Shown here in pieces: positions 17,249-63,900 of a DNA stretch of 64,000 nucleotides. This stretch comes from Paragordius varius. Lineage: Eukaryota > Animalia > Nematomorpha. The DNA is taken from NCBI GenBank assembly GCA_964247055.1, contig OZ176052.1, positions 11,904,001-11,968,000 on the forward strand, written 5' to 3'. Position numbers and translations under genes: made by a program. Every line of letters begins with the position of its first letter. Position 1 is the stretch's first letter. The notes below the pieces were generated by a model. That model was not told the origin of the DNA. It did no database searches and saw nothing but the letters and a program-made list of their open reading frames with translations.

Positions 17249-20200
17249 TTAAGAGTGAGTTTCATTGGTGCCATTTTTGGGAATGTCAAACATTTCAGCA
17301 AACAGGGGTGGCACATGTAAGCGTTGCCATCGTTGTCGATACCAAGCCATAGTTTCATCATGTTTTCGGCCCAAATTTTGTAGTTCAGGGATACTACTCA
17401 TCATGTTGGCGAATAAGTGGGATTCTGCGCTATGGTTTCGATTCATTTGAAACTTGAGCGATTCTATCAACCGCTCCCGCATATCCCCAATCTTTTTGTA
17501 GTCATAACACTTACTTTGAACGCCATTCATTGAATGTTTTTGCATTGGTTTATTGGGGTTATTATTACTTGAATCAGCGTGCGTTGCATATCCATTTAAA
17601 GCACAATCCCGTTTACCGGTCGTTGAGGCTAACAACACGATAGCAGTGAATAAACCTATCTCCGTATCATTACAGTGTATAGCGTTAAAAGTGACGGAAA
17701 AACTATGGAATGCATTCACAAGCTCCTGAGTGTAAATAAGGACAAGTTGATCACGGGTTATATATGTACCATCACCCAGATTCAGGGAACAATCAACCGG
17801 ATTTAACATACGCGCTACACGTACCAACCAAACTTGGAAGAAGCTTGCTTTAACCAGTACCAGCTGATCATCTTGGACCAAGTCTCCGAATCCCGGAATC
17901 CTTTTAGCAAATTCGACTACACGTTGTATGGCAGGAGTTATGACTATACTAGCATACTGTTCGCACAAATAAACCTTCCAACTCTCTATCTGTCCAGCTT
18001 CGTCCGAATTTTTGGTGTTTGGATTGAAGTTTAAAACAAGTCCCGGTACAGAAGAAAGTGCTAATTCCGTAGGTTTCCGCAAACATTTCCCTAAACCACC
18101 GCCCTCGCCGTTGCTCATTCTATATAGTTTTTCATCAGTGTAAGCGCAAGTATTGTGATGAGCTTGCGAGATGGTTATGATTATGTCATAAAGGGAAACA
18201 TGTTTCACTAACGAATTATTTTCATCTGTTAGCGAATTGCTACCGACTGAGCCATTTACATTATTATTGTGATTATTTTTACCCATTTTAGGGAGACTTT
18301 GATTCATGCCGGGCAAATTTCCCATTTGCAAAATGTCTGAAGATGACAGAAGAGCTTGATTTGCGCCAAGTGAAAATGAACTATTGGAGTTTTCCTCGAA
18401 AGATAGATTTGGAAGTATGGTGCTATCTACAGAATTGCTTGACGTGGAATAATTAATTAGGGGTAAATTTTGATTGGCTCCCATACGCCTAAATTCTTCT
18501 TCGGCCTTTTCTCGACATCTTTTTGGCACTCTGCCATAACGTACAGCATCACGAGACATACCTACGGCTAAACATTTCTTGAATCTGCAATATTGGCACC
18601 TGTTTCGATTCAAGCGAACGATAGAGCATTTGCCCTCTCGGAGACATCGGTATTCGATTTGTTTTTGAATGCTGCGCCGAAAGAAACCTTTGCAGCCTTC
18701 ACAAGATGTAACTCCATAATGATATCCCGAGGCCCTATCACCACATACCTTACATGGTACAAACGGTTGTTTAGGACTATTGGAATCTGCCGCAGTAACA
18801 AGATGTCGCTCCAACATATTGTTTAAGGGTGCTGAAGTATGAGATCCATCTATACCATTGCCATTCGGATTTTCACTAGATTTGTTGTAATCGAGCATAT
18901 AATTACCATTTATTTCGCTTTCACGGGCATGGGAGGTACTAGTTACTGAATTTGCCGCATAATTTCCTGAATTATATTTGTTGATTTGCAAGGAGGGTGA
19001 AAGATACGAGGAATGCTGTTGACCAACTGTTTGATTGTAAAAATTATTGTTTCCATTATAAAAGTTATTACTGTTGTTGTTTGTTAGTGAAGAGGAATCA
19101 GCCATATTTTGAATACCAACCCCATTTCTATTGGCATATGCATATAAATGATGGGACGGTTTACCATTTTCATGCACAGACAAAGAAGCGCTACCCTTTA
19201 TTTTTGTGTTTGAAATGGCCGTAGTAGAATTGCCAGAATTTGGTCCTGTGTAATTGGTCGAACCATTCTCTAACGCATTTTCATCATGTATATAGAACAT
19301 ATTTTTGTCACCATTTGTCATCCCGTCACTTTTAACACTTAAGGTGTCGGCCCCATTCGTTTGATTTTGCGGCGTTTGAATTTCCTTTATACCGCAATTT
19401 TTTTCATTATTGTTTGTTATGCTAGCACTGGTTTTTGAACACGATAATGTTTCGTCATGATGCCTTTCACTACTTACCCCGTTATGTGTTTGATGATAAA
19501 ATAAAGCAGGATTAGAATTCATGGTGGATATATCGGGGAAAAAAGGATCATTGCTCCCATTTAATAGATGATTCGAATGGGAATTTTCATTTTTATATTG
19601 ATGAGAATTTTGGGTAGTTGGATGAAAAGTAGCTCTATTACCATTTAGACTTGTATCATGAATGTCCCCACCAAGGTGCTGGGGTGAGTTAGTGTTATAT
19701 AAGGAATTAATAGGTATATTGTTGAAGGATAAAAACTCATCCTTCATAACACATTTATCATTTAAGTTGTCTAGGGCATTATCACATTGGGTAGTGGCAT
19801 CAGTATCTTGAATATCGGATTTAATCATGCCAGCAAAAGAATCTATGTATTGTTGAAATATATTGTTGGAGTTAGAACCGTTACAGTTATTCATTGTTTT
19901 GGGATTTTTGGTGGACAATCCAATAGTGTTTAACCCATTGTTTATGTTGCAATCTGTAGCAAGAAAATCGTGATCTTGAAAAGGGTCATTTGCTTCAGTG
20001 TTGGGTACTTCGTTGCCGCACAAAATGTTATTTATGTTAAGCAAATCTTCTTCGGAGTTCATATCACTCAAACCGTTAAAATCTTTTAAACAGTTCCCCG
20101 TATGATAATCTAGCAAATCGGAGGAGGAGTCATTCATAGAATTCAATGCTGCATTACTATTACTGCCTGTATTGTTATTGCTTCTGTAATTATTGGTGGA

Positions 20201-20278
20201 CAAGAAATTGGTTGGCTGAAAATTGGACGATGACTTGTTGGAGTTAAATGAGATAGTAGCTTCCCCACCAACCGACAT
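17249..20278 (-). CDS. E78: Nuclear receptor E78 (ecdysone-induced protein 78C-like, NR1 subfamily), 1009 aa, single coding exon
   Basis: The [82 protein letters not shown] carries the E78-type [12 protein letters not shown] segment (about 18560-18754). The LBD has [20 protein letters not shown] and a C-terminal [11 protein letters not shown]. Long Asn/Ser-rich N-terminus. Confidence 0.92.
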
Positions 20279-33530: not shown

Positions 33531-34360
33531 ATGCTAGTTAATTTTTTTGATCCGCTTTTCATTAAGTCCGTTATATTCATAATATTATCTCCTTTGTATT
33601 GGAATATAGTAAATTTTTAATTTCTAATGTTTAGATTGGACGTGTTGAATACAACACTAAATTTTTATCAAAATTTATTGGAAATTCATTAAATGCCGTT
33701 TATTTATTTGGTATATCCATTTTTATTTTGTCTGGATACAGAAATTACATGTATATTCGTATATATTTTTTAGATTTAAATTAGCCATTAAAGCTCAACG
33801 ACAATCTCATTTACTTGATAATCAAATTATTCATGCTATTGGATGGATATTTATTTTGGCTGGATTAATTTTGGTCTTAGGAAGTTTTTATCATTTAGGG
33901 TTCGTTAATACTTTTTTAGGTATACATATAAATATTAATTACAGGTGATTATTTTGGTTTTTTATTGGATCACAAAATCGTTTCTTTTCCATTTTCTTTT
34001 GTGGATAATCCCATGTATTGGGGTTCCTTTTTAAATTTTTTGGGAACAGCTCTTATTCATAATAGCGTTGCTGGTATTATTTTATCCTTATGGGTGTGGA
34101 TTGTATATAGGATAGCGATTATATACGAAGAGTAATTACTATTATTCTTATTTTAACATTGACCTAATTTTAATAACTATAATAACATGGAAAATATACT
34201 ATACCTATTTATATTTGATAGGCCTTTTACGGAATACATCTATAATCAAAGAAATAAATTAGGAAATGGTAAGAATGGTAAAAAATATAAAAATCTTCAA
34301 AACGGTTTTAGTACCCACTCTAGTCGTCCCAAATCTACCATGCAGTCAAAAAATGAATAA
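33531..34360 (+). CDS. PEMT: Phosphatidylethanolamine N-methyltransferase, 221 aa, 5 exons
   Basis: Exons 33531-33608, 33635-33750, 33774-33919, 33945-34131, 34222-34360 (666 nt). Motifs SPLYWNI-IGRVEY, LGSFYHLGFVNTFLGDYFG, FPFSFVDNPMYWGS and IYEEPFTEYIY. Introns of 26, 23, 25 and 90 nt. Confidence 0.93.
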
Positions 34361-34660
34361 TTTTTAAATTTTATTTTTATCATTAAATAATGCACACGAC
34401 ATTTTCCTGCCAATTTCATTTTAATATGCTTTTTTTTACTATCCGGTGTCCATTGCAATATAAATTATGCAATCATGTTTATTCCATTTAATGGCACATT
34501 TAATTAATAAATATCTGATTTGATTATTCCTACTTATTACATATGAAATTATAACAAACCATTCGTTTAGTTGAGTTCCAGAAATTTGGGATGAAACTTT
34601 AAATATCTAAAAAACTAACGATTACGATTCATATCCTTTTTTAACCCTTTATCTGAAATA

Positions 34661-35121
34661 TACCATTTACAATTAAAATTCACCCTAAAATAAATTTTGT
34701 GCTTTTTAAGATTAAAATTAAAATAATATTGAAAGAATAATAAACTAAGCCATAAAGATACTTGATGGCTTTTTGTCTTCATATATGAAGGTGTCCACTT
34801 ACAATCTTATTCCAAAGATCCTTATCTAGACATTTGGTAAATCGAGGTTTAGTATTTTTATGTCATTTTTAATGTTGTCGTTCCAGGAATGTGTTGGGCG
34901 CCCTTTGCGGTTGTTTCCGAAGGGTTGTATGTGCTTAATAGTTTGGAGTCGATGGTCGGGTTGTCTTCTTTCAATGTGACCCAAGTATTTGAGCCTGCTT
35001 CTTTGTATAAACTTTTCTAGATATCTTTCATATTTATGAGTATATTAGCCCGAAAACACATATAATTTATTTTAAGGAGGAATTTAAATTGTTTAAGGGT
35101 GAGTTTGAATTGTAAATGGTA
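34661..35121. mobile_element. MITE with TACCATTTAC termini and 21-bp subterminal repeats, carrying a LINE fragment
   Basis: TACCATTTACAATT ... AATTGTAAATGGTA. Same family as the uninterrupted copy at 37057-37352. Confidence 0.8.
34760..35018 (-). pseudogene. 5'-truncated RTE-type LINE 3' end inserted in the MITE
   Basis: Translates as FIQRSRLKYLGHIERRQPDHRLQTIKHIQPFGNNRKGRPTHSWNDNIKNDI, colinear with FIQRNRLRYYGHIQR...PNRKGRPKLTW of the LINE at 60976. Absent from the empty MITE copy at 37057. Confidence 0.8.
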
Positions 35122-35369
35122 TATTTAATTTATATCTATTTATTTTTAAAATTTTAAATTCTTAAAAACATTTTTTATCGAATGTAATTTAAAAATTGAG
35201 GACAGAAACTAAAACAATAACATTTAACTTAAACGGTGTTGGATTAATAGAAATGCGTGAACAAAAAACATTTATTTAGCTTTGCTATAAAAATGAGTGC
35301 ATATTGTACAAAATTTGGCAGTAGGGAAAAATATTAAGGGTGCTATGCTGTGTTGTATCCATCTATCAT

Positions 35370-38300
35370 TTACAAAAAGAATAACATTTTATGATGTTGT
35401 TTTCCATTGTAATTAATTATAATTTGGGGCCGAACTCCGATAATGTATTGCTCAATTTTACAGCTATTTTTCCCACGGATGATGCGAAAATACCCGTTCT
35501 CACCCCACTCTTCTCCCCATGAGTTTGCCACCAACTTTAAATAATGTAAAATATTTTGTGATTTAGATTTTGATTTTAATAGAGTATGGATATCACGACA
35601 ATTTTTTGAAATAGTATGGTAGTCATTAGTTCGAAAATACGCAGAAGGTATATTTTGATTTATAAATAATACTTTATTAAGATAAGGTATGTAAATAATA
35701 GTTTAAGTTATAGAGAGCCGTAACTAGGGTTGTGCATTTGACTGCTTTTTCAAAAAGTCCGATCAGACCCAGTCAGACCATTAAATTAGCTTTATTTTTT
35801 AAAAATTATATTAAAAAACATTAAAATTTTATTATCTCTATTCCAAAAAAAATTTACCAGCAATTTTTCCAAAAACAGCTGTTTTTTTAAATGACCATGG
35901 TCAAAAAAATAAATAGTCACTGACCTGGTCTTGACCCGGTCAATTGACCGGTGACTTGGTCAGCACAACCCTAGCCGTAACATAAATAGAGATATTCAAT
36001 TATTTTTATATGGTCACCATATTTTAACCTTTAGGATTAAAATTTAATCTTATAACCCAAGGCCTTATTTTTTAGATCATACCTATAATATGATTAGGTT
36101 TTTCCTCTAAATCCTAAAAATCTTTTACTTAAAATGGTGTTCTTTTTAAAAATTTGGACGTTTATACTTATTTACCGCTATCATTCTTCCCGTACAAATT
36201 TATCTAGAAATACATATAAAAATATTAGTATTAAAATTATTTGCCCAAAATTTATATTCTGAAACTACATTAAAAATAGATAAGTTTTTTGAGCACAGAA
36301 ATTATTAGGTATAAAGTTTGCGCTTCAAACCTTTAACACTTCAAGTCGGTCCTTGAACATTCCTAGAGTCTTCTTAAAGCAAGTTGATCCATGAACACTA
36401 GTCTTCTTGAACATTTCAAGTTGACCCTTAAACTTTTACATTTTGCGCATAACCATAATTTTTGCGTGTATTTTTTTATTTGTATCATTTTTAACCTAAT
36501 CTTTATACATTATATATTTTCATTTGAAATACACATTTTTCCAGTTTACAACAACTTTTAAGTTTTGATTGTCCAACAAAATATTAAACTTATTTATGTT
36601 TTTTAAAAATTCAAAAATAATTTTTCAAAAAACAATTGATCTTGTATAAAAAAAAGTTGATGTTGATCTAAAATTTTGAGTTAAATAAGGTAATATGTGT
36701 GATACCTAGTTTGATTTATAAAAGTTATAGGCAAAATCTTTATGGACCAACTTGAAGAGTAGGACACTCTTGAATTAAAAATATTAAAGCCGATTTGGGA
36801 CATGAACGTTATAACAATGATTGTTAGAACGGTATTAATTTTTTAAACAAAATACGAAAAAGTACTTCTATTAAAAACAATGGTTAAAATTTAAATATAA
36901 ATTCCATAATTATTACGGTTTATGCGAATGAATACAAATTGTTCGAGTTTTGATAATGTTCATATACAGTATTAGAAAAGTAATTTCAGTGCCCTTGTAT
37001 GTATATAAAAATTGATAATGACCAACTATTGTATGCAAATTATATTTTATAATATCTACCATTTACACTACAAATTCACCCTTAAACAATTCGAATTCAC
37101 CCTAACATTTATTATGTGTTTTTTAAAATTAAAATTTACTTATATTTTTCTATATTTTTAAAAAATGAGATTTTGTTTAAAATTAAGAAAATATAATAAA
37201 TAAGCCATAAAGATATATTTCATATAAATAATAAATTATTTAGCTCGAAAACACATAATTTATTTTTAGGGTGAAAATTGTTCAAGAGGGAATTGGAATT
37301 TTTCGATGGTGAATTTGAATTGTTCAAGGGTGAATTACAATTGTAAATGGTATATTTGGTGTAAATTTGTTCAAACCTATTATTTCAGGTCATAAGCTTG
37401 ACACTAATAAATTGAGAACATATAATATATTTTAATAAATTACCCAATATTTGATTCCGTTTTCGGTTCCCCATCTAAATCAATAAATTACAAATAAAAT
37501 AGAAAGGCATCATTTAAAATTAAATGATTAATATTAAAAATTATTTACCCGATGATGCGCACAGCGTGATAAAATGGTTCATTCGGTTTGATGACCATCT
37601 TTAAGGGTGCTTTTCTACAATCAAATATACCGCTAAGGTACATGAAGAAGTCCCTTGGAACTTTCATTAATGCTAATTAAATATAATTTAAATTAAACCA
37701 ATTTAATACATTTCGTTAAATTTCATTCATTGTTCATCAGAAATAAAAAAATGAAATAAAAATTTTGCCGGCTCCGAGTTTTACGCTCCTTATTAAGGAT
37801 TAAGTAAGGTGATGAATACGTTTATTTTTTAAAAGAGTGGCTCAAATTAAAAAGAATTGGATTAATGATATGCATATTTGATTGAAAACATTTCGAATTG
37901 GATTATAGTTATGAGCTCCAATCATATTAAATAAAGCGCAAATATGGGAATCTATTTGTTTCTTAAATAGTATAATATTTTATTTATATTTATCATTAAT
38001 ATCTACATTACTCAATCCCTTTTTGATATGCATAAATTTAGCCGATCACAATTACCGCAATTCCGAAACTCAAAAAATTAAGCACCCCTGTAAAAAATGG
38101 TTTCGGATTGAAAGGTCTATGATGTGTCATAGCTTTGTCGTTTCTTTTAGAATCATATATCCAAGGCATAACACGCGCCATAAAGATTACGTTTTAAGAA
38201 ACTTCTGTATTACCCCAAAAAGAATAATAATACAATCAAATATTTTAGTAATTAATACCCAGTACTGGACCATGGGTAAATATTTCATTTTGTATGTCCA

Positions 38301-41300
38301 ATTCTTTTTTGGGAAGTTTATATGCCAAGGTTACAGTTGCTGGCTGTTTGATGGGACAGTTGGATAATATCTTTTTTGGAGGGCACGGAATTTTTAGAGC
38401 TTCATACGGCATACATGATTCAGGGTAAGTTCTTTACACATATTGTAAATAAAGAAGGGTCATAATTTAACATAGTTATATTTTATAAACTATTTTTAGT
38501 TCGCATAGAAACGCTAAACAATTTAATTTGACAAAAATAAAATTGCATAAAAAGGGTCTGGGTAATCATGGAGATGACAATATGAGTAATTATACGTTGC
38601 TAGAAAGTTATTAACTATTGCAAGATAGCATATACAGCAAAGGGCATTATTATTGGCATATAGTTATTTTTTCAATTTTTACTATTATTAGCAAATAATA
38701 ATTCTCTTTGCTGCATATGCTATTTGGCAATAAATAATAACTTTCTGGCAATGTTACTTACTATGTATAAAAATTCTAATTTATCATTTACAACTCAAAT
38801 TCACCCTCGAACAATTTAAATTCACCCACGAACAATTCAAATTAATCCCTTGAATAATTCAAAATCACCTTAAAAATAAATTATGTGTTTTTGGGCTAAT
38901 ATAACTCATCATTAATATGAAATATTTATTTATGGCCTTTATTGTTTTTCTATTAAGTCAATTGAGGAAAATTTTATTATTTATAAATAAAAAAATATAT
39001 GTTATGTAAAAACATATATTTTTTAGGGTGAATTTGAGTTCGAGAGTGAATTTGAATTTTTCAAGGGTTAACTTGAGGTTCAAATGGTATTCTATATCAT
39101 TTTGATGTAATTTTAACCGATCTGAATCGATTAAATTGGAAAAATCGCAAATCGCTCTATATCTAATTATGAGGTTTAAAACAGATATGCATGGATGTTT
39201 ATTTGTATAATAATTTAATAACCCAGTATTTATCAAAAATCTTAAGGCGGAATTGATTTGACCGCCTTGGCAGCCCATTTGTCCTTTCTTTCTATTGCAG
39301 GAGAGCATGTATTGAGGGGAAAGGGATATCGATCCATTTTGAATAATACTTATGCGATCAGCTAATACATCTATTATAAATCAATATAAATAAATAAAAT
39401 GGTTGTAAAAATGACAATTAAATAAATTTTAATTGTCTTGCTAAAACTGTAGTTTTAGCAATTTAAATTGATTTTGGATGTATACATTTTGCAATTTTTT
39501 ATAAAGAATAGTTTGCTTTCATACTATCAATACCCCAGATATAATTATATTGTGCCGAAATCTAATATTATCTCGATTGTCAATATTTTTCATAAGAATT
39601 TCGTTCTGTATAAAAGCAATCATTACATTTAATGCATTAATTGAATTGCCCTGAGATTTTAATACAAATGAAGTCTTTGTGCTCATTTTTATTTATCGAC
39701 GCATATTCCAAAACTTTTGCGATTTTTCGGCATTTTTTAATAACCAATTACCTGTTAATGCTATGGCCCACGAAGATGCACACAATTTTTGATTTCGGAT
39801 CCCATTGATCAAATAATGTCGGCGAATATCATAAGCATGTTCGGGCAAATTGGCGTTACCGGGTGGAGTTAGCAGGGTAAGTTTGACAAAAAACTTGGGA
39901 GGAGGAGGAAAGACCCCCAATTTAGTTGAACCAAGCATGTGAAGTGTCTGACCCCAAAAATTGGAATAGTTTCCAGCTTTCCACCTATTTTTTATGGCCA
40001 AAATATCTTGATTTATTAGGTGAAAATTGAATAAATCCCATGCAAAATACTGTTGTTTTAATATTCTTACATTATAAACTATAAAAGAATTTAAGTATAC
40101 GTATAGTATCTTGGTAAAGAATTGATTTCATTAATTCTTTGAGCGCTAATCCCACAAATATGCTTTACACACTTGATTCCATCAACTTTGCAAGAGCTAA
40201 TTTATGAATAAAAAAATGAAATTTCATCTATCAATATCAAAAAAGAGCTTTAATATGCCAATACCTATCTTCGAATTCATACTTAAACATCAAGCACACG
40301 AAGAGTTAAAACTGATAATTTTATATCTATAAAACTTTTTAACCAAACACTTTCAAAAACGAATTCGAAACTGTTTATAATGCAAAAAATCAAAACTTAT
40401 CTAAAAGTCCCTAATCTTCTAAAAATCCAAAATTCACCTTATATATTCCGAACTCATATATTTCCGCTCTATTATTTGTCGCCAGAAAATTGCATTACCG
40501 CAGAAAATATTAACATAGAACCGTAACTTTGATTAGATAATTTAACCGAATTATAGTTGCATTGTTATGGCGAAAAACAGAAATATGATGTATCGTTAAA
40601 ATAATAAATTATGTATAATTTATGATAAAGCTACACTTAGATCTCTTGGGACCGACTTAAAATCTGAATACTCTAAAACATACATTATTTTAATATTAAT
40701 AAAAACTTAAACTAATTGGCTGTATCTGATTTCTAAATAATCGATTGTGTTATGATAGTATATTTGTTTTGTAATAATTTGTTGTCCATTCTAGAGTAAT
40801 TATAAAGCCAAAATTTTACACCTACCATACACTGAATATGCAATCTGTAAATCCATTTTGATTGATGAATAAATTTATTTTAGATGAGTAAAAATATTAG
40901 ATAATCACTTTTAGCGTAACAAATCACAAATAGCAAACATAATTTTAGTTTTTATCATTATAAAGATAAATATATATATACCAATGATAGCATGATTCTT
41001 TGAAAGAAGCTCCCAAAGGATATACTCGACCATCATATAGACAAGAGTCTTTATTATTAATCTTTATTTGTTCTTTCTCAAATGTTGAGGTTGGCCCCAA
41101 TTGTGTGTCATCTAAAGATAAATTTATATTATTTGCATTTATACAAATATTTCACGAGTCAATTAAGCACATCTTTGGAGTTACGTCAAAATAAAGAGTA
41201 TTTTAAAAATTATGTTTTGATAGCATGTAAAATTTAAATTCGTAAAAATGGAATATCAATAAACGTTTTAAGGGTTTTCTGTCCAGAATTATTTATGTGT

Positions 41301-46514: not shown

Positions 46515-49500
46515 TTAATTTCTTTCTGCAAAAATATAAGTAGCATATGGGAGCGTTTTAAAAGAAAATGGTTCAAAGTCATGTCCCGTCCCTTGATAAA
46601 ATTTTCTTTGAAACTCAACCCAATGTAATCGTAGGGCATGTAAGAAGGCTGATAATCCCTCCATCAAAACTAAGATAGCTATTGTTAATATGGCCCAAAA
46701 CGCGAAAGCTAAATATAATTTAATTGGGCACAAGTATTTTTCTTCTCTGCAATTGAACCCATAAGCCAATACCATGCGCCACAAAACCTAGAAGATTATG
46801 CGTTATATATGAATAATTTGCTTTTAATCAAGTAAATATTTTATATAGATATACTCCAGATAATTCAGAATGAGCAAGGCTCAATGCCCACAACCTAAGG
46901 TACGATGCTGTGTGGGAAAGAGATTCCAAACAGAATTCCACGGCGCCCATTGCTTGTTTGGTCAACATTTTCCCAAAAAATGAGTGAACTTTTTCCTCTA
47001 TTTGATTGTTAGTTTGATTATGTTGTTTAACTCGTATAAGGTGTAACTTTATCAATGGTTTGGCCAATAACATAAGAGGTATGCATAGTAACGCTATAAT
47101 GACTAGTGCAATCTGTAAAATCTTTTGTCCTTTGTACAAATACACGCCACAAGTCTTGTCATCGGAATAGGAAATGAGGAACATACGTATTAAGTTTTGA
47201 AGCAGACTTGGGGCACATGCTGATTGTGTTGGATCGATTGCAATCCATTTTGCAATAATTAGGATTACCAGGTAGCCAAAGGTTGCCCCAAGGAATATCA
47301 TTCTGGGAACAAAAACACACCACAAATCTAACCATTCACCCTTATCGATATCATTGTAGGCCCCAATAGCCAACCCCATATACATATGGGCTATCCCAAA
47401 TACTATGGACAATTTCATTTTGTAGGAGTTACTAAATGATATTTCGTTCTTTGAAAGATGCCAAATTGGATCCATGCCATATGGGTAAGGACTGGCTTGA
47501 AAGAGAGTTTTTTTACTAAAATTGTTACTAAAATCAGGATCTGCAAAATTAAAAGCATCTATCGGATCTAAAGTGACATAGCTATAATCAAATGGATGCA
47601 TACTGTGAGTGTGCGGTTCTTTAAATAAGGCAAAAACTTTTGTAGAATTAGTTTTGTAGTTTAATGGATATTGTCGGGGTCCCATTATCTCTTGACTCTG
47701 ATTACTCAAATATTCATCATAGTCGGGATAATACATTCTCCACCGTGATCCGTAGAAAGCAATAGATTTTGAAAAGAAGTCGTTGTAAATGACTCCTGTG
47801 TATATGGAGAATATGCCCATAGCCAAAATTAAATATCTCCCATCATAAAACATCTTTGTAGTTTCTTCCGATTTTAGGCTTCGGCTCAAATAAGATTTGT
47901 CAAACCAAATGATATATGCCATTATGCATGTGACCAAGAGTCCGTGACCAGCATCGCCAAACATTACAGCAAACAGAAATGGAAATGTTACCATAAGAAA
48001 AGGGGCCGGATTCATCTCCTTGTATTTGGGTGTACCATACGCATTGACTATGGCTTGGAAAGCATGAGTATACTTGTTGGTTTCAATGTATGTTGGTGGT
48101 CTATATTTGGGTTTGTGATGAAGGCTTTCATCAATAATCAGGTGATGGATAACGTTGCAATTTTGAAATTCTTGATTGTTTAGCTGACATATGGTACTTG
48201 TGATTTTATCAATCTTTGAAACTGGGCACCAACCCTCTCCAATCATATATGAACCATGTTGTCCCTTACCCGACTTAAAATAGTTCATTATGGTGTAAAC
48301 GGATTTCGTTTTAAGCAGCCTTACCATATTTGCCCGAAGATCCGGCGCAAATGATTTTAGCAACTCCATTTTGTGCTCTTTCCCTCGATTAATTATCTAA
48401 AATATGTTAATAAATAAGTTGAAATTAAAAACGCGACCGTTTAAGATTTCACTTCCGGCCCCATATCATTTATTTTTGGTTTCGATTTCATCAATACAAT
48501 GTTTTTTGCGAAAAAAGTGTTTTGTTTCCATTAATGATTCTGATTCCGGTTTTATATATAACCAGAAAAATTATTGATTGTAAAGATAAAGTATGCAGGC
48601 GTAAAAAATAGTCATATATAAAAGCCAAAAATTAATTGTATGCTATTTTTCTCTGAAAATTCAAAATATAAGCTTTTATAATTTTGAATAAGATAACGTG
48701 GTATTATTCATTAATATAAAAATTAAAATTTTTAAGCCGTTTTTAACCGGGTTTAGATCAAATGTGGATTATGTTCCGGTTTAACAAAAAAATATTAAAT
48801 TGATTGTTTTTAAATTTATTTACCTCACTTAATTCGTATATCTGGGTCGTCAAATTTTCATACACCACACCCAATTCAGAAGATAGCAAAGGAAATGGAT
48901 ATATGGAAGCTTTAAAACTTTCACACAGTTTAAGCAATCGACTTTTAAATTCTTTACCTTGGAAAAAGATGACAAATACGGTTTTGAAAAGTGTCTCCAT
49001 GGACGTCGGATCTACGATTGCATTTGGATAATTGTAACGTTTAACTAATACATTTCCACGGCACAATCTCCAAACTATCGTTTCAAAAGCATTAAATTTC
49101 GACGTCAAAATGATCCCTGAACAATCATAAATAACAAAAAATTAACTTATTACTTATATGTACCGAATTCTATGTTATTTGCATGCAGTAACGAAAGCTA
49201 TTATAGGCTATTTCGGTATGGTAAATGGCTAAAAGAGGATTTTATACAGGTCTGTTATACCATTTACATTTCAAGAGAGTCCTTAAACACTTAAAGTTGG
49301 TCCTTGAATACTTCAAGTTGGTCCCTAAACTTTTTAAGCATGGTATGATTCATTTTATTAGTTGCATGTTTAATTAAACACTGTATTAATATTTTCAAAT
49401 ATGTTTCAAATAAAAATGATAAATCTCATATATGGCAACAGTGTAATTAAATACCATTTTAGCCATTTAAAAAATGGTATATAATAGCTCTCGCTAAGCA

Positions 49501-50687
49501 AAATCAAAAAATATTTATCCACTAATATGTTCAATAATTTGCTATAGATAAATTAAATATTTATTAAAAATTTTGTAAAAATTATCTCAATTACTAGCAA
49601 ACTATTAAAAGCGATTCATTTTCTAACTAATAAAAATAATTTGTATGTACAATTATAAGAATATTTGAAAATACTGTTAAAAATGCCTAGAGCATATATT
49701 GGTTTGCTAGGACTTAATTTTAATCAATAGTTTTTGTTCTTTACATCAATTTGCCAAAGTGAATATTATAAAAAATTTTTTATTGTCAACACTTCACCAT
49801 ACTCTTATTATTGTATCTTACTGCGTTTTCCAAAAAACACTCTATTTTCAATACATTTATTATATTAATATTAAGGGAATTTTAATTATGACCTTATAAG
49901 AGTGTATCTGTGCTTGAAAGTTTTTTCGCTCATAAATAAATATTTATAGTGATATATCTTAGATTATTTAAATGTACTAATAGAACGAACCTGCCATACA
50001 TTCTATCTTAAGAATGTTCTTAATCTGTCGTTTACCCACGGCACTTATGGTTTTATCCAATTCTTCAACCTGTTCATTGGGTTCAATAAATAAATTAGCC
50101 ATTAAGGGGATATTAGATTTGACTTCTGGACTCTGATAGCCCTGGCGTGATGAGGGACTACTTGAGGATTGACTTTTATTACGGGTCATGGATTCATTAT
50201 CAGCTTTTGGGCTAGTTAAAAAAGTTTCCTTCATCATGTTAGTGTCCCAAATATTTTCATTGATGGTCGTTCGTACAATATCGAGTTCTGTGAGGTACAA
50301 CAAATTCTTTTGCATTGATACTTCTTGTTCATGTATAATTTTGAATTCGGAATGTAGGGCCTCAAATTCTTGTAATTTGGTCCGAAATTCTTTTTCCGTC
50401 AGTGCCGGTAATAAAGCTACCAAATCCTCCAATGTGTGGATATCGGCCTCCCGAAATTGTATCACGTTTTCGTTTTCACAATGCTTGTAGAAATCTTTTA
50501 AGATAGTCTCTAATCGTTGACACATTTTAATGTTTTCCACGTATTTACGTTGAAAATAATTGCAACCGACATTTAGGTCAAGGAATTGCACTAAACCCAA
50601 ATCACCCAACAAGGCTAAAGTAGTATAAATAGATTCTGTTTGAAAGAAAAATTGGTATAGGCCCATATCCTCGCTATAAAAATCCAT
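46515..50687 (-). CDS. ATP6V0A: V-type proton ATPase V0 subunit a (116 kDa family), about 934 aa, 4 exons, divergent
   Basis: Exons 50687-49991, 49116-48824, 48396-46855, 46787-46515 (2805 nt). Motifs [70 protein letters not shown] (essential Arg) and [18 protein letters not shown]. Paralog identity not assignable. Confidence 0.93.
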
Positions 50688-54785: not shown

Positions 54786-57700
54786 ATGGATCAACCCACT
54801 GGTATTCTTTTTCAATTTATGCTAGATCTTGAACTTAAAAATATAATTGATAAATTGGCAAATTTTGTTGCAAGAAACGGACCACAATTTGAAGAAATGA
54901 CCAAATCTAAACAGTTACATAATCCAAAGTTCAGTTTTCTATACGGTGGTCCTTACAATTCATATTATCGGTATAAAGTTCACGAGGAGATACAAAGTTA
55001 TTTTAATTTTTAATGTTAGATATGTCAAAAATGAATACCAACCAATATCAGTTTTCTAATACACAAAATTTACCGATACCATCAAATACTTATGATGGTA
55101 ATCGTGATTATTTAAATGATCAACTTGAAAAACTTAATGCAGAACAACAAGTATTTAAATTTGTAATTTACAGAATCGTATAATGGAAGGGATTCTTAAA
55201 GAATATGATAGGGAAATAATTAATTTACTTCAAGTCTGTCAACTGGATTCCGTTGAAATAGATAAGATTATCCAACCTATAATTGAAACTTGTACCAAAG
55301 ATTCCATATTAGTTAATCAAAGTTATATAATATAGAATGGAAAAACATGGGTTTTACAGCACTTATCTCCCCCATTTTCTAAACTATTTTCAGTGTATTT
55401 ACTGAAAAAGTGAGCAAATTTAAAAAATATATATTTGTTTTAATAAAAAATAGTTTAATTACTATAATAATTAATAAATATTTATTTTATATTGTAGGGT
55501 ACTGTCTGAATCCTTATTTGATTCTCGCCTTCACATTATTTATCTGATAAATGATCTGATGCACCATTGGTATGATATATTTTATATAACATATTTATAC
55601 AAAATATATATAAGCCTTTTGGTTTTTACCATATTGTGATTTAACACTTGGATGCAACACATTGATTTTAGTCCTTCGATTTAAATTGGGGTAGTTAAAT
55701 ACCCCAGGCCTCTTTAAAATCAAATACTTTAAAAAATATGGAAGGAATCGAAACCACGGCAAAATTTTGCACTTATATAACATTAATAAACCTAAATATA
55801 CTAAAAACTTATTCAAAAATATTTGATTTTACATATTTAAAGCTAAAACCGAAAGGTAAAATTTCGTCAACGTGACATGTGTCAAATAGTAAAATTAGAA
55901 AATAATACAAAATAAACCGCTTTTTCCATTTCTATCAATGTTAGATGTAATTTATATTAAAAATTAGCTTTAGTTTTACCCTTAAAATTAAATAAAGACG
56001 ATATTTTGCAAAAATTTTGCAAAATAAAAATGGCGTCGAAGTAGTTTGAGATGGAACTTTTTTTTCAAAACAAAATTTTATCAAGATATTTTGGCATATT
56101 TATATAATTTTTATCAGGATAGAAGCATAAATTTAAATCGGGACCGTTTCCTTCAGTAGTTTTTTAAAAATCCTAACTTAAATTTAGTCTGGGGTATTTA
56201 GATACCCCAATTTGAATCGAAGTGTTAAAGCGTTTGTAAATTGTATTTTGTTTTTCCAAAAATGAACACTTTAGTAAATTTCAAAAATTTATTTGATTAC
56301 GGCTCTTTTTTACTGTTCAGCGGTGTACCTATATAAATTATTAAAAACGGTTTTAAAATGGTTACAACTATCTGTTTTTCAAATTCTCAATTTCCCAATG
56401 CAAATCGCCTTTTAAATAATAATTAAAATAAACCAATTATTTATTGTTGTGATGAAACTAAAAATAATATTTATAATATAGCTGAAATCAATTCGAATAA
56501 AATATTTGTGAGTATTTATATATTGTAATTTTGATGGAGGTACCAAAATATGTATAAGGATGATATGCAACGTAAATATATAAATTTCAATTACACATTT
56601 TTATTAATTCATTGCTTTTTCAGTTTTGTCTGTTAACAATGATATCTCAAAAATGAACTTAAATATAAAAAATTGTTTTGGGATTCAACATTTACAACGG
56701 GCATACATTAATGAGTTTGACTTTCTTATGCAAAAAGATTTACCTAATTTTATTACACAAATTAAATTATTCCTTTTTGATATGAGTAAACATAAAAATT
56801 TACATTTTATGTTTACATTTGCAATAGTTTTAAAATTCTAAACTAAATATAATTATTTTTCTGTTAATTTAGCTCTCGACGAAACGTTCAAGAATTAAAG
56901 GGTGCTCTGACAAACGTTATTAAACCAATTTATTCGCACACTTTTGTTAATGCTCAAAATCAAGAACAAAAAGACAAATTAGAAAAACTGTTAAATTTAT
57001 GGGAAAACAACAATTATTTTGATTCTACAACCATTGCAGTAAATTTATTATTTTTTACTTTATATTTTTTTAAAAAAAGGTGGTAAGTTCGCTATTTTAC
57101 ACAATATCTTTGTAAAGAGTTAAGTTATTTTACTCATACAAGCTTATATTCCGCCATATTAATAAAATTTGATATGATATTCATCTAAGTAATTAATATT
57201 CAAAAACTAGCAAATTATGTTAAATGTCATATGATTAAAATTTATATGCGGAAAACAGTGTTACTTAATTTTCTATGAAATTTCCATAATTACTTTCATT
57301 ATTAGCAATTAAGAGACCCCTATCAAGTCCTCAATAATTATCAGAATGATTTAAAGTACCAATATGAGAACATTGTAAATCCCATCATATCTGAGTTTGA
57401 TGAACGCTACAATACCCTTAAACGTGAATACGATTACAATGAATCGACAAAAACGCCTTACCATAACAGCACTGTTAATGCTATGAATAAAGTTTATCCT
57501 TCGGCACAACCCCCACTTTTGCCCGGTAAGTTAGAAACAAACTTTTTATCTTTTCCCTAATAATTTTTATTTTTGGGCAAGGGATTCTTAAAACTTAGAT
57601 TTAAAAGTTTAGCTATCTTTTCAAGTTGGTTTAAGGTTTGAGGTTTGATATTTATGTTATAAAACCAGACTTTTACGCATAAAGTTTAAGCCAATTTTGT

Positions 57701-60958: not shown

Positions 60959-63900
60959 CCATCCATCCATTCATTTTAGGTCCCAGGGTATCTGGGGTTT
61001 CCATGCACCAACTTCCTGAACAATGTCCTATCAAAGACTTGTTCGTGTTCAATATTGAAGTGTGATAGATCTTGGGTCAGCTGTTTGGACCATGTGAGCT
61101 TAGGGCGGCCTTTTCTGTTTGGGCCGGGTATATTTAAATGTTGTATTTTTTGGACCCAGTTATCGGAATTCATACGTTGAATATGTCCGTAATATCGCAA
61201 TCGATTGCGCTGGATGAATAGAGCTATGGGTTCATCTTCTTCTATGGTATTATCAAAATTATTGTTGCAGATTTTGAGCATGTGATTTTCAGCTCTAGTA
61301 AGTCTATTTAGGTCTGTTGCTGTAAGGGCCCAGGTTTCTGTAGCGTATGTCATAGCTGGTCTTATTCCCATTTTGTAAATCTTTATCTTGTGATTCGATT
61401 TGATATTTTTATGAGTTAAAATATATTTTAATTGATTGAATTTGGCCCATCCTTGTCTGATTCTATGAGAAATGGCATCCCTCAAAGAACCATCAGATGC
61501 TATATAATCGCCCAGATATGGAAAAGATGTTACAACTTCTAGTTTATCTCCATTAAAGTTTAAAGTACGTGGATTCGATATTGGCAGTGGTATTGATGAA
61601 GCACATGGTGTGCAGATGAAATTATTATTATTAATTAACTTTCCTTTTATGTTGGAACATTTTTTATGGACCCAATTTCTGCATTTTGTACAACAAAGTG
61701 AGTTTAGTTTTACCTCAGTGGTGCACTCTGGGCATGGGAACTTTATAGTTTTATGTTCATCTCCTGTGATTAGAATTTTAGTTTTGGTTGTATTGATTTT
61801 AAGACCGTATTTATGTAATTGTTTTGACCATATAAGATATTTATTTTCGAGTATTGAAATATCTTCTGCAGTGATTATGAGGTCGTCTGCATAAAGAATT
61901 TCATAAGGCAGACCTTCTCTCATATCTTTTGTTATGTAATCAATTATAGCTATAAAAAGAAGTGGGCTAAGGACAGATCCCTGATGCAGCCCAGTATTTA
62001 TACTAAAATACTCTGAATTCCCAACAGGAGTAAGAACACAACTGATTGAGTTAGTGTAGATTAACATAATTAACTTAATGGTATATTCATCTACGTTGTT
62101 GTAGCGCAGTGATTCTATTATTAGTGCTCTAGGTACTGAGTCGTAAGCCTTTTCTAAATCGACAAAAAGGTGGAATAGTTTACGACCTTTTGCTCGGTAT
62201 TTATCTTGTAATTGTCTGAGTAGGAAAATTGGATCGATTGTGCTTTTGCCCGCTGAAAAGGCGAATTGCATTGGATTAATTGATATGAGCTGGACGATAC
62301 GATTTTTGAGGCACATTTCAAAAATTTTTAACCCATGTTCAAGAAGTTTTAAGGGCCTGTATGAGGAACAGGTTAGGATATCTCCTTTATTTTTGAAAAT
62401 GGGAAATATAATGCTTTTTTCCCAGTCTTTGGGTATTTTCATTTCAACTATTATTTTGTTAAATAAATTTGTTAGAAGCATGGTTATATTGGGTATTAAT
62501 TTAATGATATCAAAACATAGTTCACTAGGGCCCGAAGCCTTGTTTGATTTCATTTGGTCTAAAGCAATCTCAATTTCTTGTATTGTGAATGTATTTAATG
62601 GGCCACAACAGGGATCTCGGTCAGAATTTATTATGGGTGTTAAAGGGTTGTTTAGATTTTGCTCCATATATTTTTGCCATATGGATTTAATTAATTCTGG
62701 TTGTATTTGTAAATTATTATTATTATCTTTTATACATTTAATCGTTGGTATATCTTTTTTGTTATTATTGTAAAGTTTCATATGTTTAAAAATTTTATTA
62801 TTTTGGATTTCCTTTTCCAATTTATCGGCAGTATCTTTAGCCTTTTCATTCATTAATTTATTTATTTCCTTTTGAACCTTTTTGTTGTATTTATAATACT
62901 CAGTTTTGTCGTTTTCTGTTTTCGATTTCTTCCATTTTTTATACAAACGCGCCTTTTCTTTAAGTAATGGCTTAATTGCATCGTCCCACCACCATTTCTT
63001 TTGGGCTTTGCTCTTTCTTCTACCACACCATTTTTCTACATTTTCAATCGTATTGCTTCTTAGACTTTGCCAGGAGTCTTCAACGTCAAGATTATCAATA
63101 TTTAAGTTAAGCGACTTTTTGAAATTATTCATTATATCAGGTTTTTTAAACTTGTGTATATTAAGTTTAGGTTTGGTTCTATGATTGAAAGGCCTTGAGT
63201 TAAATTTGAAAATTGATGTTAAAACTTTATGCTGTGTTTCAGAGTTATAAGTGGTTGTATTTACCAGATATTTTCGAATGTGTTGGCTAGTTAGGATGTA
63301 GTCTATTGTTGTATTATTATTGCCAGAAGTGTATGTAATCAGTTTATTTTTGCTTGTGGTGAATAAAGTGTTTGCTAACTGTAGTCGCTGAGCTGCACAG
63401 AATTCTAAGACATTTTCTCCTTCTTTGTCCCGATTATCAAAGTTGTATCCTCCATGTATACCAGAAAAACCTTCGCTGCTTCCAACATGTGCATTTAAAT
63501 CTCCTCCAATCATTATACAGTCTGTTTCGGGTATATTGGAACATATTTGATAGAGCTGATCCCAAAAATCCAGCTTGCATTTATCGGGCAAGCCTTTTTG
63601 GGGTGCATATACGGAAATAACATTGAGGATCAATTTGTTGTATATCATTCTAGCTTGAATAATTCTATCACTGTGCCGGGTCACGGTAATTAGGTTTTGT
63701 CGGTGTGTTTCTTTCATCATTATAGCGACGCCAGATTGTCCTTTGTTCCCACCTTGGTATAGTAATGAATAACCATCAAAGTGTTTTATACCTGCATTTT
63801 TATATCGAGTTTCTTGTAAACAGCATATGTTTAAATCTAAGTTTCGCACCGTATCTATTACCAGCCATTGCTTATTAACCATTGTTCCAACATTCCAAGA

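What the first reader, a model, noticed from the sequence alone, without database searches (positions are those of the whole stretch)
33609..33944. Ultra-short 23-26 nt spliceosomal introns are required to build PEMT
A full conserved PEMT only forms if three tiny GT-AG introns are removed: 33609-33634 (26 nt, GTAAATTTTTAATTTCTAATGTTTAG), 33751-33773 (23 nt, GTATATTCGTATATATTTTTTAG) and 33920-33944 (25 nt, GTATACATATAAATATTAATTACAG). Retaining any one gives a stop within a few codons. The junctions (WNI|IGR, TFLG|DYFG) fall where I recall vertebrate PEMT introns, suggesting ancestral introns that shrank. This is far below the usual minimum in model animals and resembles Paramecium or dicyemid introns. 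It implies a spliceosome able to work where the 5' site, branch point and 3' site nearly overlap. Standard gene finders would call this a pseudogene or miss it.
Basis: partly seen in the sequence, partly recalled or inferred. Interest (0 to 1): 0.9.

Follow-up and report, generated by a model that had tools for sequence, protein, structure and literature searches.

The report
Tiny introns in a horsehair-worm PEMT gene
A working phospholipid-methyltransferase (PEMT) gene of a horsehair worm (Nematomorpha) is split by three introns of only 23-26 bases at ancient intron positions. This points to a third animal lineage with introns under 30 bases, which the papers I could search do not report.

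Summary

- **Alignment.** The protein aligns without a gap across every junction to PEMTs of fish, bird, red alga and ciliate, and to Gordionus (67% identity, E 5e-94).
- **Intron positions.** All four introns sit at the positions and phases of introns in bird, leech and Gordionus PEMT. The homologous first three introns measure 19800/7783/4506 nt in bird, 188/208/106 in leech, 39/45/42 in Gordionus and 26/23/25 here.
- **Not a pseudogene.** Seven of eight exonic polymorphisms are synonymous in the spliced frame. A 1-nt length polymorphism lies inside intron 2.
- **Host.** It is a nematomorph but not Gordionus: three proteins have Gordionus as clear best hit, and one tree gives 100/100 support.
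- **Generality.** CHERP in the same window has three more 23-24-nt introns.
- **Missing evidence.** I found no RNA. The four runs laid were all DNA, so splicing is inferred, not observed.

Sub-30-nt animal introns are published for dicyemids and myxobolid myxozoans only. This scan's unchecked first-stage notes report the same intron class elsewhere in this genome.

The parts
33531..33608 (+). PEMT exon 1 (78 nt, ATG to ..YWNI)
   Evidence: First ATG. It ends at a phase-0 junction homologous to bird WNV|VAR, leech WNV|VAR and Gordionus WNI|VGR. All three SNPs here are synonymous.
33609..33634 (+). Tiny intron 1, 26 nt, GT..AG, phase 0
   Evidence: Retention gives a stop after 3 codons. Removal gives a gap-free alignment. 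The homologous intron is 39 nt in Gordionus, 188 nt in leech and 19800 nt in bird. One SNP at 33621.
33635..33750 (+). PEMT exon 2 (116 nt)
   Evidence: Exactly 116 nt, as in bird, leech and Gordionus. The SNP at 33712 is synonymous.
33751..33773 (+). Tiny intron 2, 23 nt, GT..AG, phase 2
   Evidence: Retention shifts the frame, with a stop after 11 codons. A 22-nt allele (1 nt left out at 33766, with 33758 C>T and 33759 G>T) takes about half the depth at that place in X1 and also occurs in X7. The homologous intron is 45 nt in Gordionus.
33774..33919 (+). PEMT exon 3 (146 nt)
   Evidence: Exactly 146 nt, as in bird, leech and Gordionus.
33920..33944 (+). Tiny intron 3, 25 nt, GT..AG, phase 1 (TFL G|DYFG)
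   Evidence: Retention gives a stop after 9 codons. Same position and phase as bird TFL|GDYFG. The homologous intron is 42 nt in Gordionus. One SNP at 33931.
33945..34131 (+). PEMT exon 4 (187 nt = ancestral 112 + 75, one intron lost)
   Evidence: Pfam PF04191 E 8e-18. Bird, leech and Gordionus have an intron after LG(T/W)(A/S)L that is absent here. Three of four SNPs are synonymous.
34132..34221 (+).
   Evidence: It is the only GT..AG removal that reproduces the conserved EEPFTxxIY; the other open alternative (34132-34251, 120 nt) deletes that motif. Same position and phase as bird (774 nt) and Gordionus (156 nt).
34222..34360 (+). PEMT exon 5 and TAA stop
   Evidence: PFTEYIYNQ.. aligns with PFTxxIY of other PEMTs.
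54997..55335 (+). Independent support: CHERP-like gene with tiny introns 54997-55019 (23), 55151-55173 (23) and 55312-55335 (24)
   Evidence: Exon 1 holds a Surp module (PF01805, E 2e-20). Removing the three GT..AG segments keeps one open frame. These junctions were not checked against homologues.

Best explanation
This is an intact, selected PEMT gene (phosphatidylethanolamine N-methyltransferase, 221 aa) of a nematomorph. Its first three introns are ordinary GT-AG spliceosomal introns at ancestral bilaterian positions, and in this lineage they have shrunk to 23-26 nt. A fourth ancestral intron is 90 nt and a fifth has been lost.

The tiny introns are about 85% A+T and start GTA or GTT. They have an A 7-9 nt before the AG and no real polypyrimidine tract. 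I infer that the major (U2-type) spliceosome removes them by intron definition, with the branch point close to the 3' site and about 15-19 nt from the 5' site.

Each tiny intron puts a stop in frame if retained, so unspliced RNA cannot make the enzyme.

Shown: the gene model, its conservation, the intron homology and the purifying selection. Inferred: the act of splicing, the branch point and the type of spliceosome.
For: - **Sequences and frame.** Exact sequences, GT..AG ends and frame restoration.
- **Family.** Pfam PEMT on exon 4, E 8e-18.
- **Colinearity.** Gap-free alignment of the spliced protein over residues 3-188 to PEMTs of distant eukaryotes. 67% identity with 0 gaps over 184 residues to Gordionus PEMT P0412.
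- **Gene structure.** Exon sizes 116 and 146 and intron phases 0/2/1/2 are identical to bird, leech and Gordionus.
- **Selection.** 7 of 8 exonic polymorphisms are synonymous, P about 1e-4 to 3e-3. Listed variants are 5 per 74 nt in the tiny introns against 8 per 666 nt in exons, Fisher p 0.006. A 1-nt length polymorphism lies inside intron 2.
- **Second gene.** The same intron class occurs in CHERP.
- **Host.** Nematomorph.
Against: - No RNA evidence. The four runs laid were DNA and show no joints at these places. The five runs listed as RNA under the same species label held none of the sampled words, and the single read-laying run was already spent.
- The variant table was cut to the best-supported rows, so the polymorphism counts may be incomplete.
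- Sequence-only censuses of the window did not show GT..AG segments of 18-30 nt bridging open frames more often than decoy dinucleotides. Evidence that this is a class therefore rests on two genes here plus unchecked first-stage notes.
- Six introns cannot establish a branch-point rule at this A+T content.
Confidence: 0.9

Rival explanations
1. The locus is a decaying PEMT pseudogene. The three segments would be small insertions that happen to begin GT and end AG.
For: No transcript was seen. No protein of this species' PEMT turned up in either protein collection.
Against: 7 of 8 exonic polymorphisms are synonymous in the spliced frame. The exons have no stop or frameshift. All three segments lie exactly at ancestral intron positions and phases, where Gordionus has 39-45-nt introns. 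The exon sizes 116 and 146 are preserved to the base.
Confidence: 0.03
2. The introns are real but poorly or conditionally spliced, as reported for very short microsporidian introns. Much of the mRNA would then be non-productive, and splicing would act as a throttle on PEMT output.
For: The splice signals are minimal (GTA/GTT .. AG). Every tiny intron gives a premature stop if retained, the arrangement expected if nonsense-mediated decay clears retained forms. PMC13644364 cites a median splicing efficiency of about 25% for microsporidian short introns.
Against: Nothing here measures efficiency. The enzyme is under purifying selection, so productive splicing must occur. The same class sits in a second conserved gene, CHERP.
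Confidence: 0.06
3. The window is not from an animal with tiny introns. It would be from a contaminant such as a ciliate, or the sequence would be mis-assembled.
For: Ciliates have introns of this size, and a ciliate PEMT is among the better matches.
Against: The gene ends at TAA and uses the standard code. Its neighbours are animal genes: an E78-like nuclear receptor, V-ATPase a and an RTE retrotransposon. Their best hits are Gordionus by wide margins, and the V-ATPase tree gives 100/100. Independent contigs from several runs carry the same sequence.
Confidence: 0.01

Closest known systems
Ultra-short introns of the dicyemid Dicyema japonicum (Lu et al. 2019, PMC6736024; cited in PMC13644364)
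   Same: A parasitic animal with GT-AG introns mostly under 30 nt that keep conserved positions. The 5' signal is reduced to GTA, with weak A residues before the AG. The genome is rich in repeats (49%).
   Different: A different phylum (Spiralia, against Ecdysozoa here). The Dicyema genome is small (67.5 Mb) at 36.7% GC, whereas this window is about 27% GC. Here tiny introns stand beside introns of 67 to about 870 nt and transposon-filled ones in the same window.
Ultra-short introns of myxobolid myxozoans (Henneguya, Thelohanellus, Myxobolus; Hadjez et al. 2026, PMC13644364)
   Same: Median intron length 22-27 nt, conserved positions, GTA..AG signals, A residues near the 3' end, A+T-rich parasite genomes, and a conventional U2 snRNA and U2AF reported.
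   Different: They are cnidarians. That survey of 51 animal genomes names only Myxobolidae and Dicyema, and no nematomorph appears in its main text. Here a relative, Gordionus, still has 39-45 nt at the same three positions, so the last step of shrinkage can be followed within one phylum.
Ciliate introns (Paramecium; Stentor 15-16 nt), as cited in PMC13644364; the about 25 nt for Paramecium, chlorarachniophyte nucleomorph introns (18-21 nt) and the NMD argument are from my own knowledge
   Same: The same size range. Retention always yields a premature stop, as in the NMD-based argument made for Paramecium.
   Different: These are protists with uniformly tiny introns. Here the size distribution appears to be two-part, and the tiny ones sit at the 5' end of the gene (PEMT introns 1-3, CHERP first introns).
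PEMT / OPI3 phospholipid N-methyltransferases (Pfam PF04191)
   Same: Full-length colinear match, with conserved WN(I/V).(G/A)R, LGDYFG, NPMYWGS and EEPFT motifs.
   Different: Nothing unusual in the protein. It has a lysine- and asparagine-rich C-terminal tail of about 30 residues with no counterpart in most homologues.

Membership tests
PEMT (Pfam PF04191, phospholipid methyltransferase) | Significant match to the family profile | tested here: met
   Exon 4 alone scores 65.2 bits, E 8e-18, against a cut-off of 25.
PEMT (Pfam PF04191, phospholipid methyltransferase) | Full-length colinearity with characterised or annotated PEMT/OPI3 proteins | tested here: met
   BLASTP E 5e-55 to fish PEMT with 0 gaps over 186 residues. 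E 5e-94 to Gordionus PEMT. Alignment.
PEMT (Pfam PF04191, phospholipid methyltransferase) | AdoMet-binding residues (the GxG and EE motifs of human PEMT, recalled from memory) | tested here: inconclusive
   The EE of ..IIYEE|PFT is present and straddles intron 4. I could not place the GxG motif with certainty without a reference numbering. No solved PEMT structure was found by sequence.
PEMT (Pfam PF04191, phospholipid methyltransferase) | Methylation of phosphatidylethanolamine | not testable with these tools
   Needs an enzyme assay or complementation of a yeast opi3/cho2 mutant.
Ultra-short (<30 nt) U2-type spliceosomal introns | GT..AG ends and length under 30 nt | tested here: met
   26, 23 and 25 nt, all GT..AG.
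Ultra-short (<30 nt) U2-type spliceosomal introns | Removal restores a conserved protein with no gap at the junction | tested here: met
Ultra-short (<30 nt) U2-type spliceosomal introns | Position and phase homologous to accepted introns in other species | tested here: met
   Bird L002, leech L001 and Gordionus L003 were mapped exon by exon.
Ultra-short (<30 nt) U2-type spliceosomal introns | Spliced junctions observed in RNA | not testable with these tools
   No RNA run holds the locus.
Ultra-short (<30 nt) U2-type spliceosomal introns | A recurrent class across many genes of the genome | tested here: inconclusive
   Three more occur in CHERP. The V-ATPase a and cathepsin genes have none. Censuses without homology had no power. 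Many unchecked first-stage notes report the class elsewhere in the genome.
Ultra-short (<30 nt) U2-type spliceosomal introns | Branch-point adenosine at a fixed short distance from the 3' site | tested here: inconclusive
   An A lies within -9..-7 in 6 of 6 and at -8 in 4 of 6. This is not distinguishable from chance in introns that are 85% A+T.
Nematomorpha (host genome) | Proteins closest to a sequenced nematomorph, by a clear margin | tested here: met
   Identity to Gordionus against the next hit: V-ATPase a 49% vs 40% or less, E78-like receptor 60% vs 43% or less, PEMT 67% vs 47% or less. All three Gordionus genes lie on one 34.6-Mb contig. The tree gives 100/100.

The most novel reading that the evidence does not exclude
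Nematomorpha hold a third, independent animal origin of a discrete class of 21-26-nt introns. It would have arisen after this lineage split from the Gordionus lineage, where the same introns are still 39-45 nt. The class is concentrated at the 5' ends of genes in a large, repeat-rich genome, so it would not be a by-product of genome compaction. Gene finders with a minimum intron length near 30-40 nt break such genes, so part of the 'rampant loss of universal metazoan genes' reported for the phylum (BUSCO about 70%) could be an annotation artefact.
Probability: 0.35. Interest if true: 0.85.

Novelty: new member of a known kind. Interest (0 to 1): 0.68.

Why it matters
**A third animal lineage.** Introns under 30 nt were long thought absent from animals. 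A survey published in September 2026 (PMC13644364) accepts only two lineages, dicyemids and myxobolid myxozoans, and predicts that more will be found. A horsehair worm would be the third, and the first in Ecdysozoa.

**A comparative series.** It offers a graded comparison within one phylum: the same three PEMT introns are 39-45 nt in Gordionus and 23-26 nt here. That makes the question of what sets the lower limit of intron length directly testable.

**A practical consequence.** Annotation and completeness tools that refuse tiny introns will call such genes broken or absent. This bears on the published claims of massive gene loss in Nematomorpha.

**The gene itself is ordinary.** PEMT here shows nothing unusual.

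Tried and rejected
1. **RNA evidence.** Two run searches listed five runs marked as RNA under the same species label, all with 0.00 of the words. They were DNA of a diverged haplotype or strain. That gave polymorphism data but no junctions.
2. **Window-wide censuses without homology.** I counted GT..AG segments that bridge open frames, chains of two such segments, and versions weighted by a codon-usage score. None showed more GT..AG segments of 18-30 nt than decoy dinucleotides or other length classes. With about 27% GC and a handful of true cases in 64 kb, the method has no power. This neither supports nor refutes the class.
3. **Rfam.** No family reached its gathering threshold in the window.
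4. **Solved structures.** Exon 4 found no PEMT in the PDB by sequence; only chance matches to bacteriorhodopsin appeared.
5. **This species' own PEMT protein.** None was found in the 1.8-billion representative set or in the profile search.
6. **Look-ups that failed.** The fish PEMT P0013 and the Gordionus V-ATPase P0165 were not on record for locus retrieval.
7. **Papers not held.** Cunha et al. 2023 on nematomorph genomes and the supplements of PMC13644364 are not held. I could not check whether either mentions nematomorph intron sizes.
8. **Rejected readings.** Dicyemid or myxozoan origin was rejected by the best hits and the tree. Ciliate origin was rejected by the TAA stop and the animal neighbours.

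Full report
**What is in the sequence.** Each starts GT and ends AG. Read through, they give stops 3, 11 and 9 codons past the junction.

Removing them joins exons of 78, 116, 146 and 187 nt. The product is 221 residues.

**It is PEMT, and the junctions are exact.** Exon 4 alone matches Pfam PF04191 (PEMT) at E 8e-18. A search of 1.8 billion representative proteins with exon 4 returned 430 PEMT-family proteins. The spliced model aligns to them end to end. Against the fish Myxocyprinus PEMT, residues 3-188 align to 186 residues with no gap (43% identity, E 5e-55). The same holds for a bird, a red alga and an unnamed transcriptome protein (P0036); the ciliate needs one 1-residue gap away from the junctions.

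A profile search found the PEMT of the nematomorph Gordionus (P0412, 215 aa). It is 67% identical with no gap over 184 residues spanning all four junctions, E 5e-94. Only one GT..AG choice at each site gives this result.

**The introns are ancestral ones that shrank.** I mapped three PEMT genes exon by exon with an exact spliced mapper.

| Species | Coding exon sizes (nt) | Introns at the window's positions 1-3 (nt) |
|---|---|---|
| Bird (Vidua) | ..108, 116, 146, 112, 75, 52 | 19800, 7783, 4506 |
| Leech (Helobdella) | 93, 116, 146, 112, 76 | 188, 208, 106 |
| Gordionus | 90, 116, 146, 112, 75, 106 | 39, 45, 42 |
| This window | 78, 116, 146, 187 (= 112 + 75), 139 | 26, 23, 25 |

The window's four introns have the same positions and phases (0, 2, 1, 2) as in the other three. 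One ancestral intron, 2536 nt in Gordionus, has been lost. The last intron is 774 nt in bird, 156 in Gordionus and 90 here.

**It is not a pseudogene or an assembly error.** Contigs of four public runs, from three samples and two studies, carry the locus unspliced. They are DNA. Two of them (X4, X5) are a diverged haplotype or strain.

- Of the eight exonic differences listed in the PEMT exons, seven are synonymous in the spliced frame, spread over exons 1, 2 and 4.
- The chance of seven or more is 1e-4 if all changes are equally likely, and 3e-3 for transitions only.
- The 74 nt of tiny introns carry five listed variants against eight in 666 nt of exons (Fisher p 0.006).
- One variant is a 1-nt deletion in the T run of intron 2. 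It takes about half the depth at that place in X1 and also occurs in X7. A segregating 1-nt length change is harmless in an intron and a frameshift in an exon.
- Caveat: the variant table was cut to its best-supported rows.

**Whose genome.** The neighbours are animal genes: an E78-like nuclear receptor in one 1009-codon exon, V-ATPase subunit a, a CHERP-like gene, a cathepsin-B-like gene and an RTE retrotransposon.

- The best hit of V-ATPase a is Gordionus sp. m RMFG-2023, at 49% identity and E 3.5e-137, against 5.7e-111 for the next hit.
- The best hit of the receptor is Gordionus at 60% and E 1e-183, against 9e-120.
- PEMT is 67% identical to Gordionus, against 47% or less for anything else.
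- All three Gordionus genes lie on the same 34.6-Mb contig.
- A maximum-likelihood tree of V-ATPase a joins the window to Gordionus at 100/100. The window's branch is long.

The Gordionus genome paper reports 26.9% GC, 64% repeats and 71.6% BUSCO completeness, which resembles this window. The host is therefore a nematomorph but not Gordionus. I could not name the species.

**Is it a class?** In the same window the CHERP-like gene (Surp module in exon 1, E 2e-20) needs three further GT..AG segments removed to stay open: 54997-55019 (23 nt), 55151-55173 (23 nt) and 55312-55335 (24 nt). All six tiny introns are 13-17% G+C, start GTA or GTT, and put a stop in frame if retained.

V-ATPase a has introns of about 870, about 400 and 67 nt, and the cathepsin gene has kilobase introns filled with repeats. 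Tiny and long introns therefore coexist. In PEMT and CHERP the tiny ones are the 5'-most, and in Gordionus PEMT the three 5' introns are likewise the short ones.

My attempts at a census without homology failed. Many first-stage notes of this scan report the same class elsewhere in the genome, but they are unchecked.

**How it probably works.** The ends are canonical and the positions are those of ordinary introns. The simplest reading is removal by the major spliceosome through intron definition. An A lies 7-9 nt before the AG in all six introns, and TAAT occurs in five of them. That would put the branch point 15-19 nt from the 5' site and leave almost no polypyrimidine tract. At 85% A+T this pattern is not statistically distinguishable from chance, so the branch point is an inference. 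The published account of myxobolid and Dicyema introns describes the same features: GTA, AG, and a few A residues near the 3' end (PMC13644364).

**Comparison with what is known.** Sub-30-nt introns in animals are published for dicyemids (PMC6736024) and myxobolid myxozoans (PMC13644364). The latter surveyed 51 animal genomes, found no other case, and expects more. Its main text names no nematomorph. The two nematomorph genome papers I read do not contain the word 'intron'. Full-text searches joining nematomorphs or hairworms with introns found nothing relevant. Cunha et al. 2023 and the survey's supplements are not held, so prior mention cannot be excluded.

**Verdict.** The gene is ordinary. 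The introns are a new member of a known kind, probably a third animal lineage with introns under 30 nt. The missing piece is RNA.

Noticed in passing
window 34482-35269, 35664-36057, 37043-37436, 38422-39012: Short stretches next to PEMT have summed word depths of 1e5 to 2e6 in the DNA runs, against about 500 for unique sequence. They are dispersed repeats present in hundreds to thousands of copies, probably MITE- or SINE-like. They fill the introns of the neighbouring cathepsin gene.
   Followed up: no
window 35373-40127, minus strand: A cathepsin-B-like gene (Peptidase_C1) is spread over about 4.7 kb in at least four exons. The active-site motif reads CASSW where papain-family enzymes have CGSCW, so the catalytic cysteine appears replaced by serine. 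It may be an inactive or altered protease.
   Followed up: partly
window 17252-20278, minus strand: An E78-like nuclear receptor is encoded in a single 1009-codon exon. The N-terminal half is long, asparagine- and serine-rich and of low complexity. The DNA- and ligand-binding half is 60% identical to Gordionus.
   Followed up: partly
window 33531-34360, 17252-20278, 46518-50687 versus Gordionus contig OX940786.2: PEMT, the E78-like receptor and V-ATPase a, all within this 64-kb window, have their Gordionus orthologues on one 34.6-Mb chromosome-scale contig. The immediate neighbours of Gordionus PEMT (a Sushi-domain gene and a P450) differ from those here.
   Followed up: no
run X7 (organism D) on window 33659-38722: A run labelled as a different organism holds low-depth (2-14) contigs, several with no differing letters to this window. 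They include the 22-nt allele of PEMT intron 2. This looks like the worm's DNA inside another organism's sample, such as a host or a contaminated library.
   Followed up: no
window 54802-54825, plus strand: A fourth candidate tiny intron in CHERP (GTATTC..GCTAG, 24 nt) is a multiple of three and has no stop. Sequence alone cannot tell whether it is spliced or translated.
   Followed up: partly
window 34826-34984, minus strand, and 60976-63882, minus strand: A short open frame just downstream of PEMT (..GNNRKGRPTHSWNDNIKNDI..) resembles the C-terminal end of the intact 968-codon RTE-type retrotransposon at 60976-63882 (..GPNRKGRPKLTWSKQLTQDL..). It is probably a 5'-truncated copy.
   Followed up: no
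L003 10091-10478 (Gordionus PEMT): In Gordionus the three 5' introns of PEMT are 39, 45 and 42 nt, and the two 3' introns are 2536 and 156 nt. The short-5', long-3' pattern is shared with the window's gene and may be a phylum-wide rule.
   Followed up: partly
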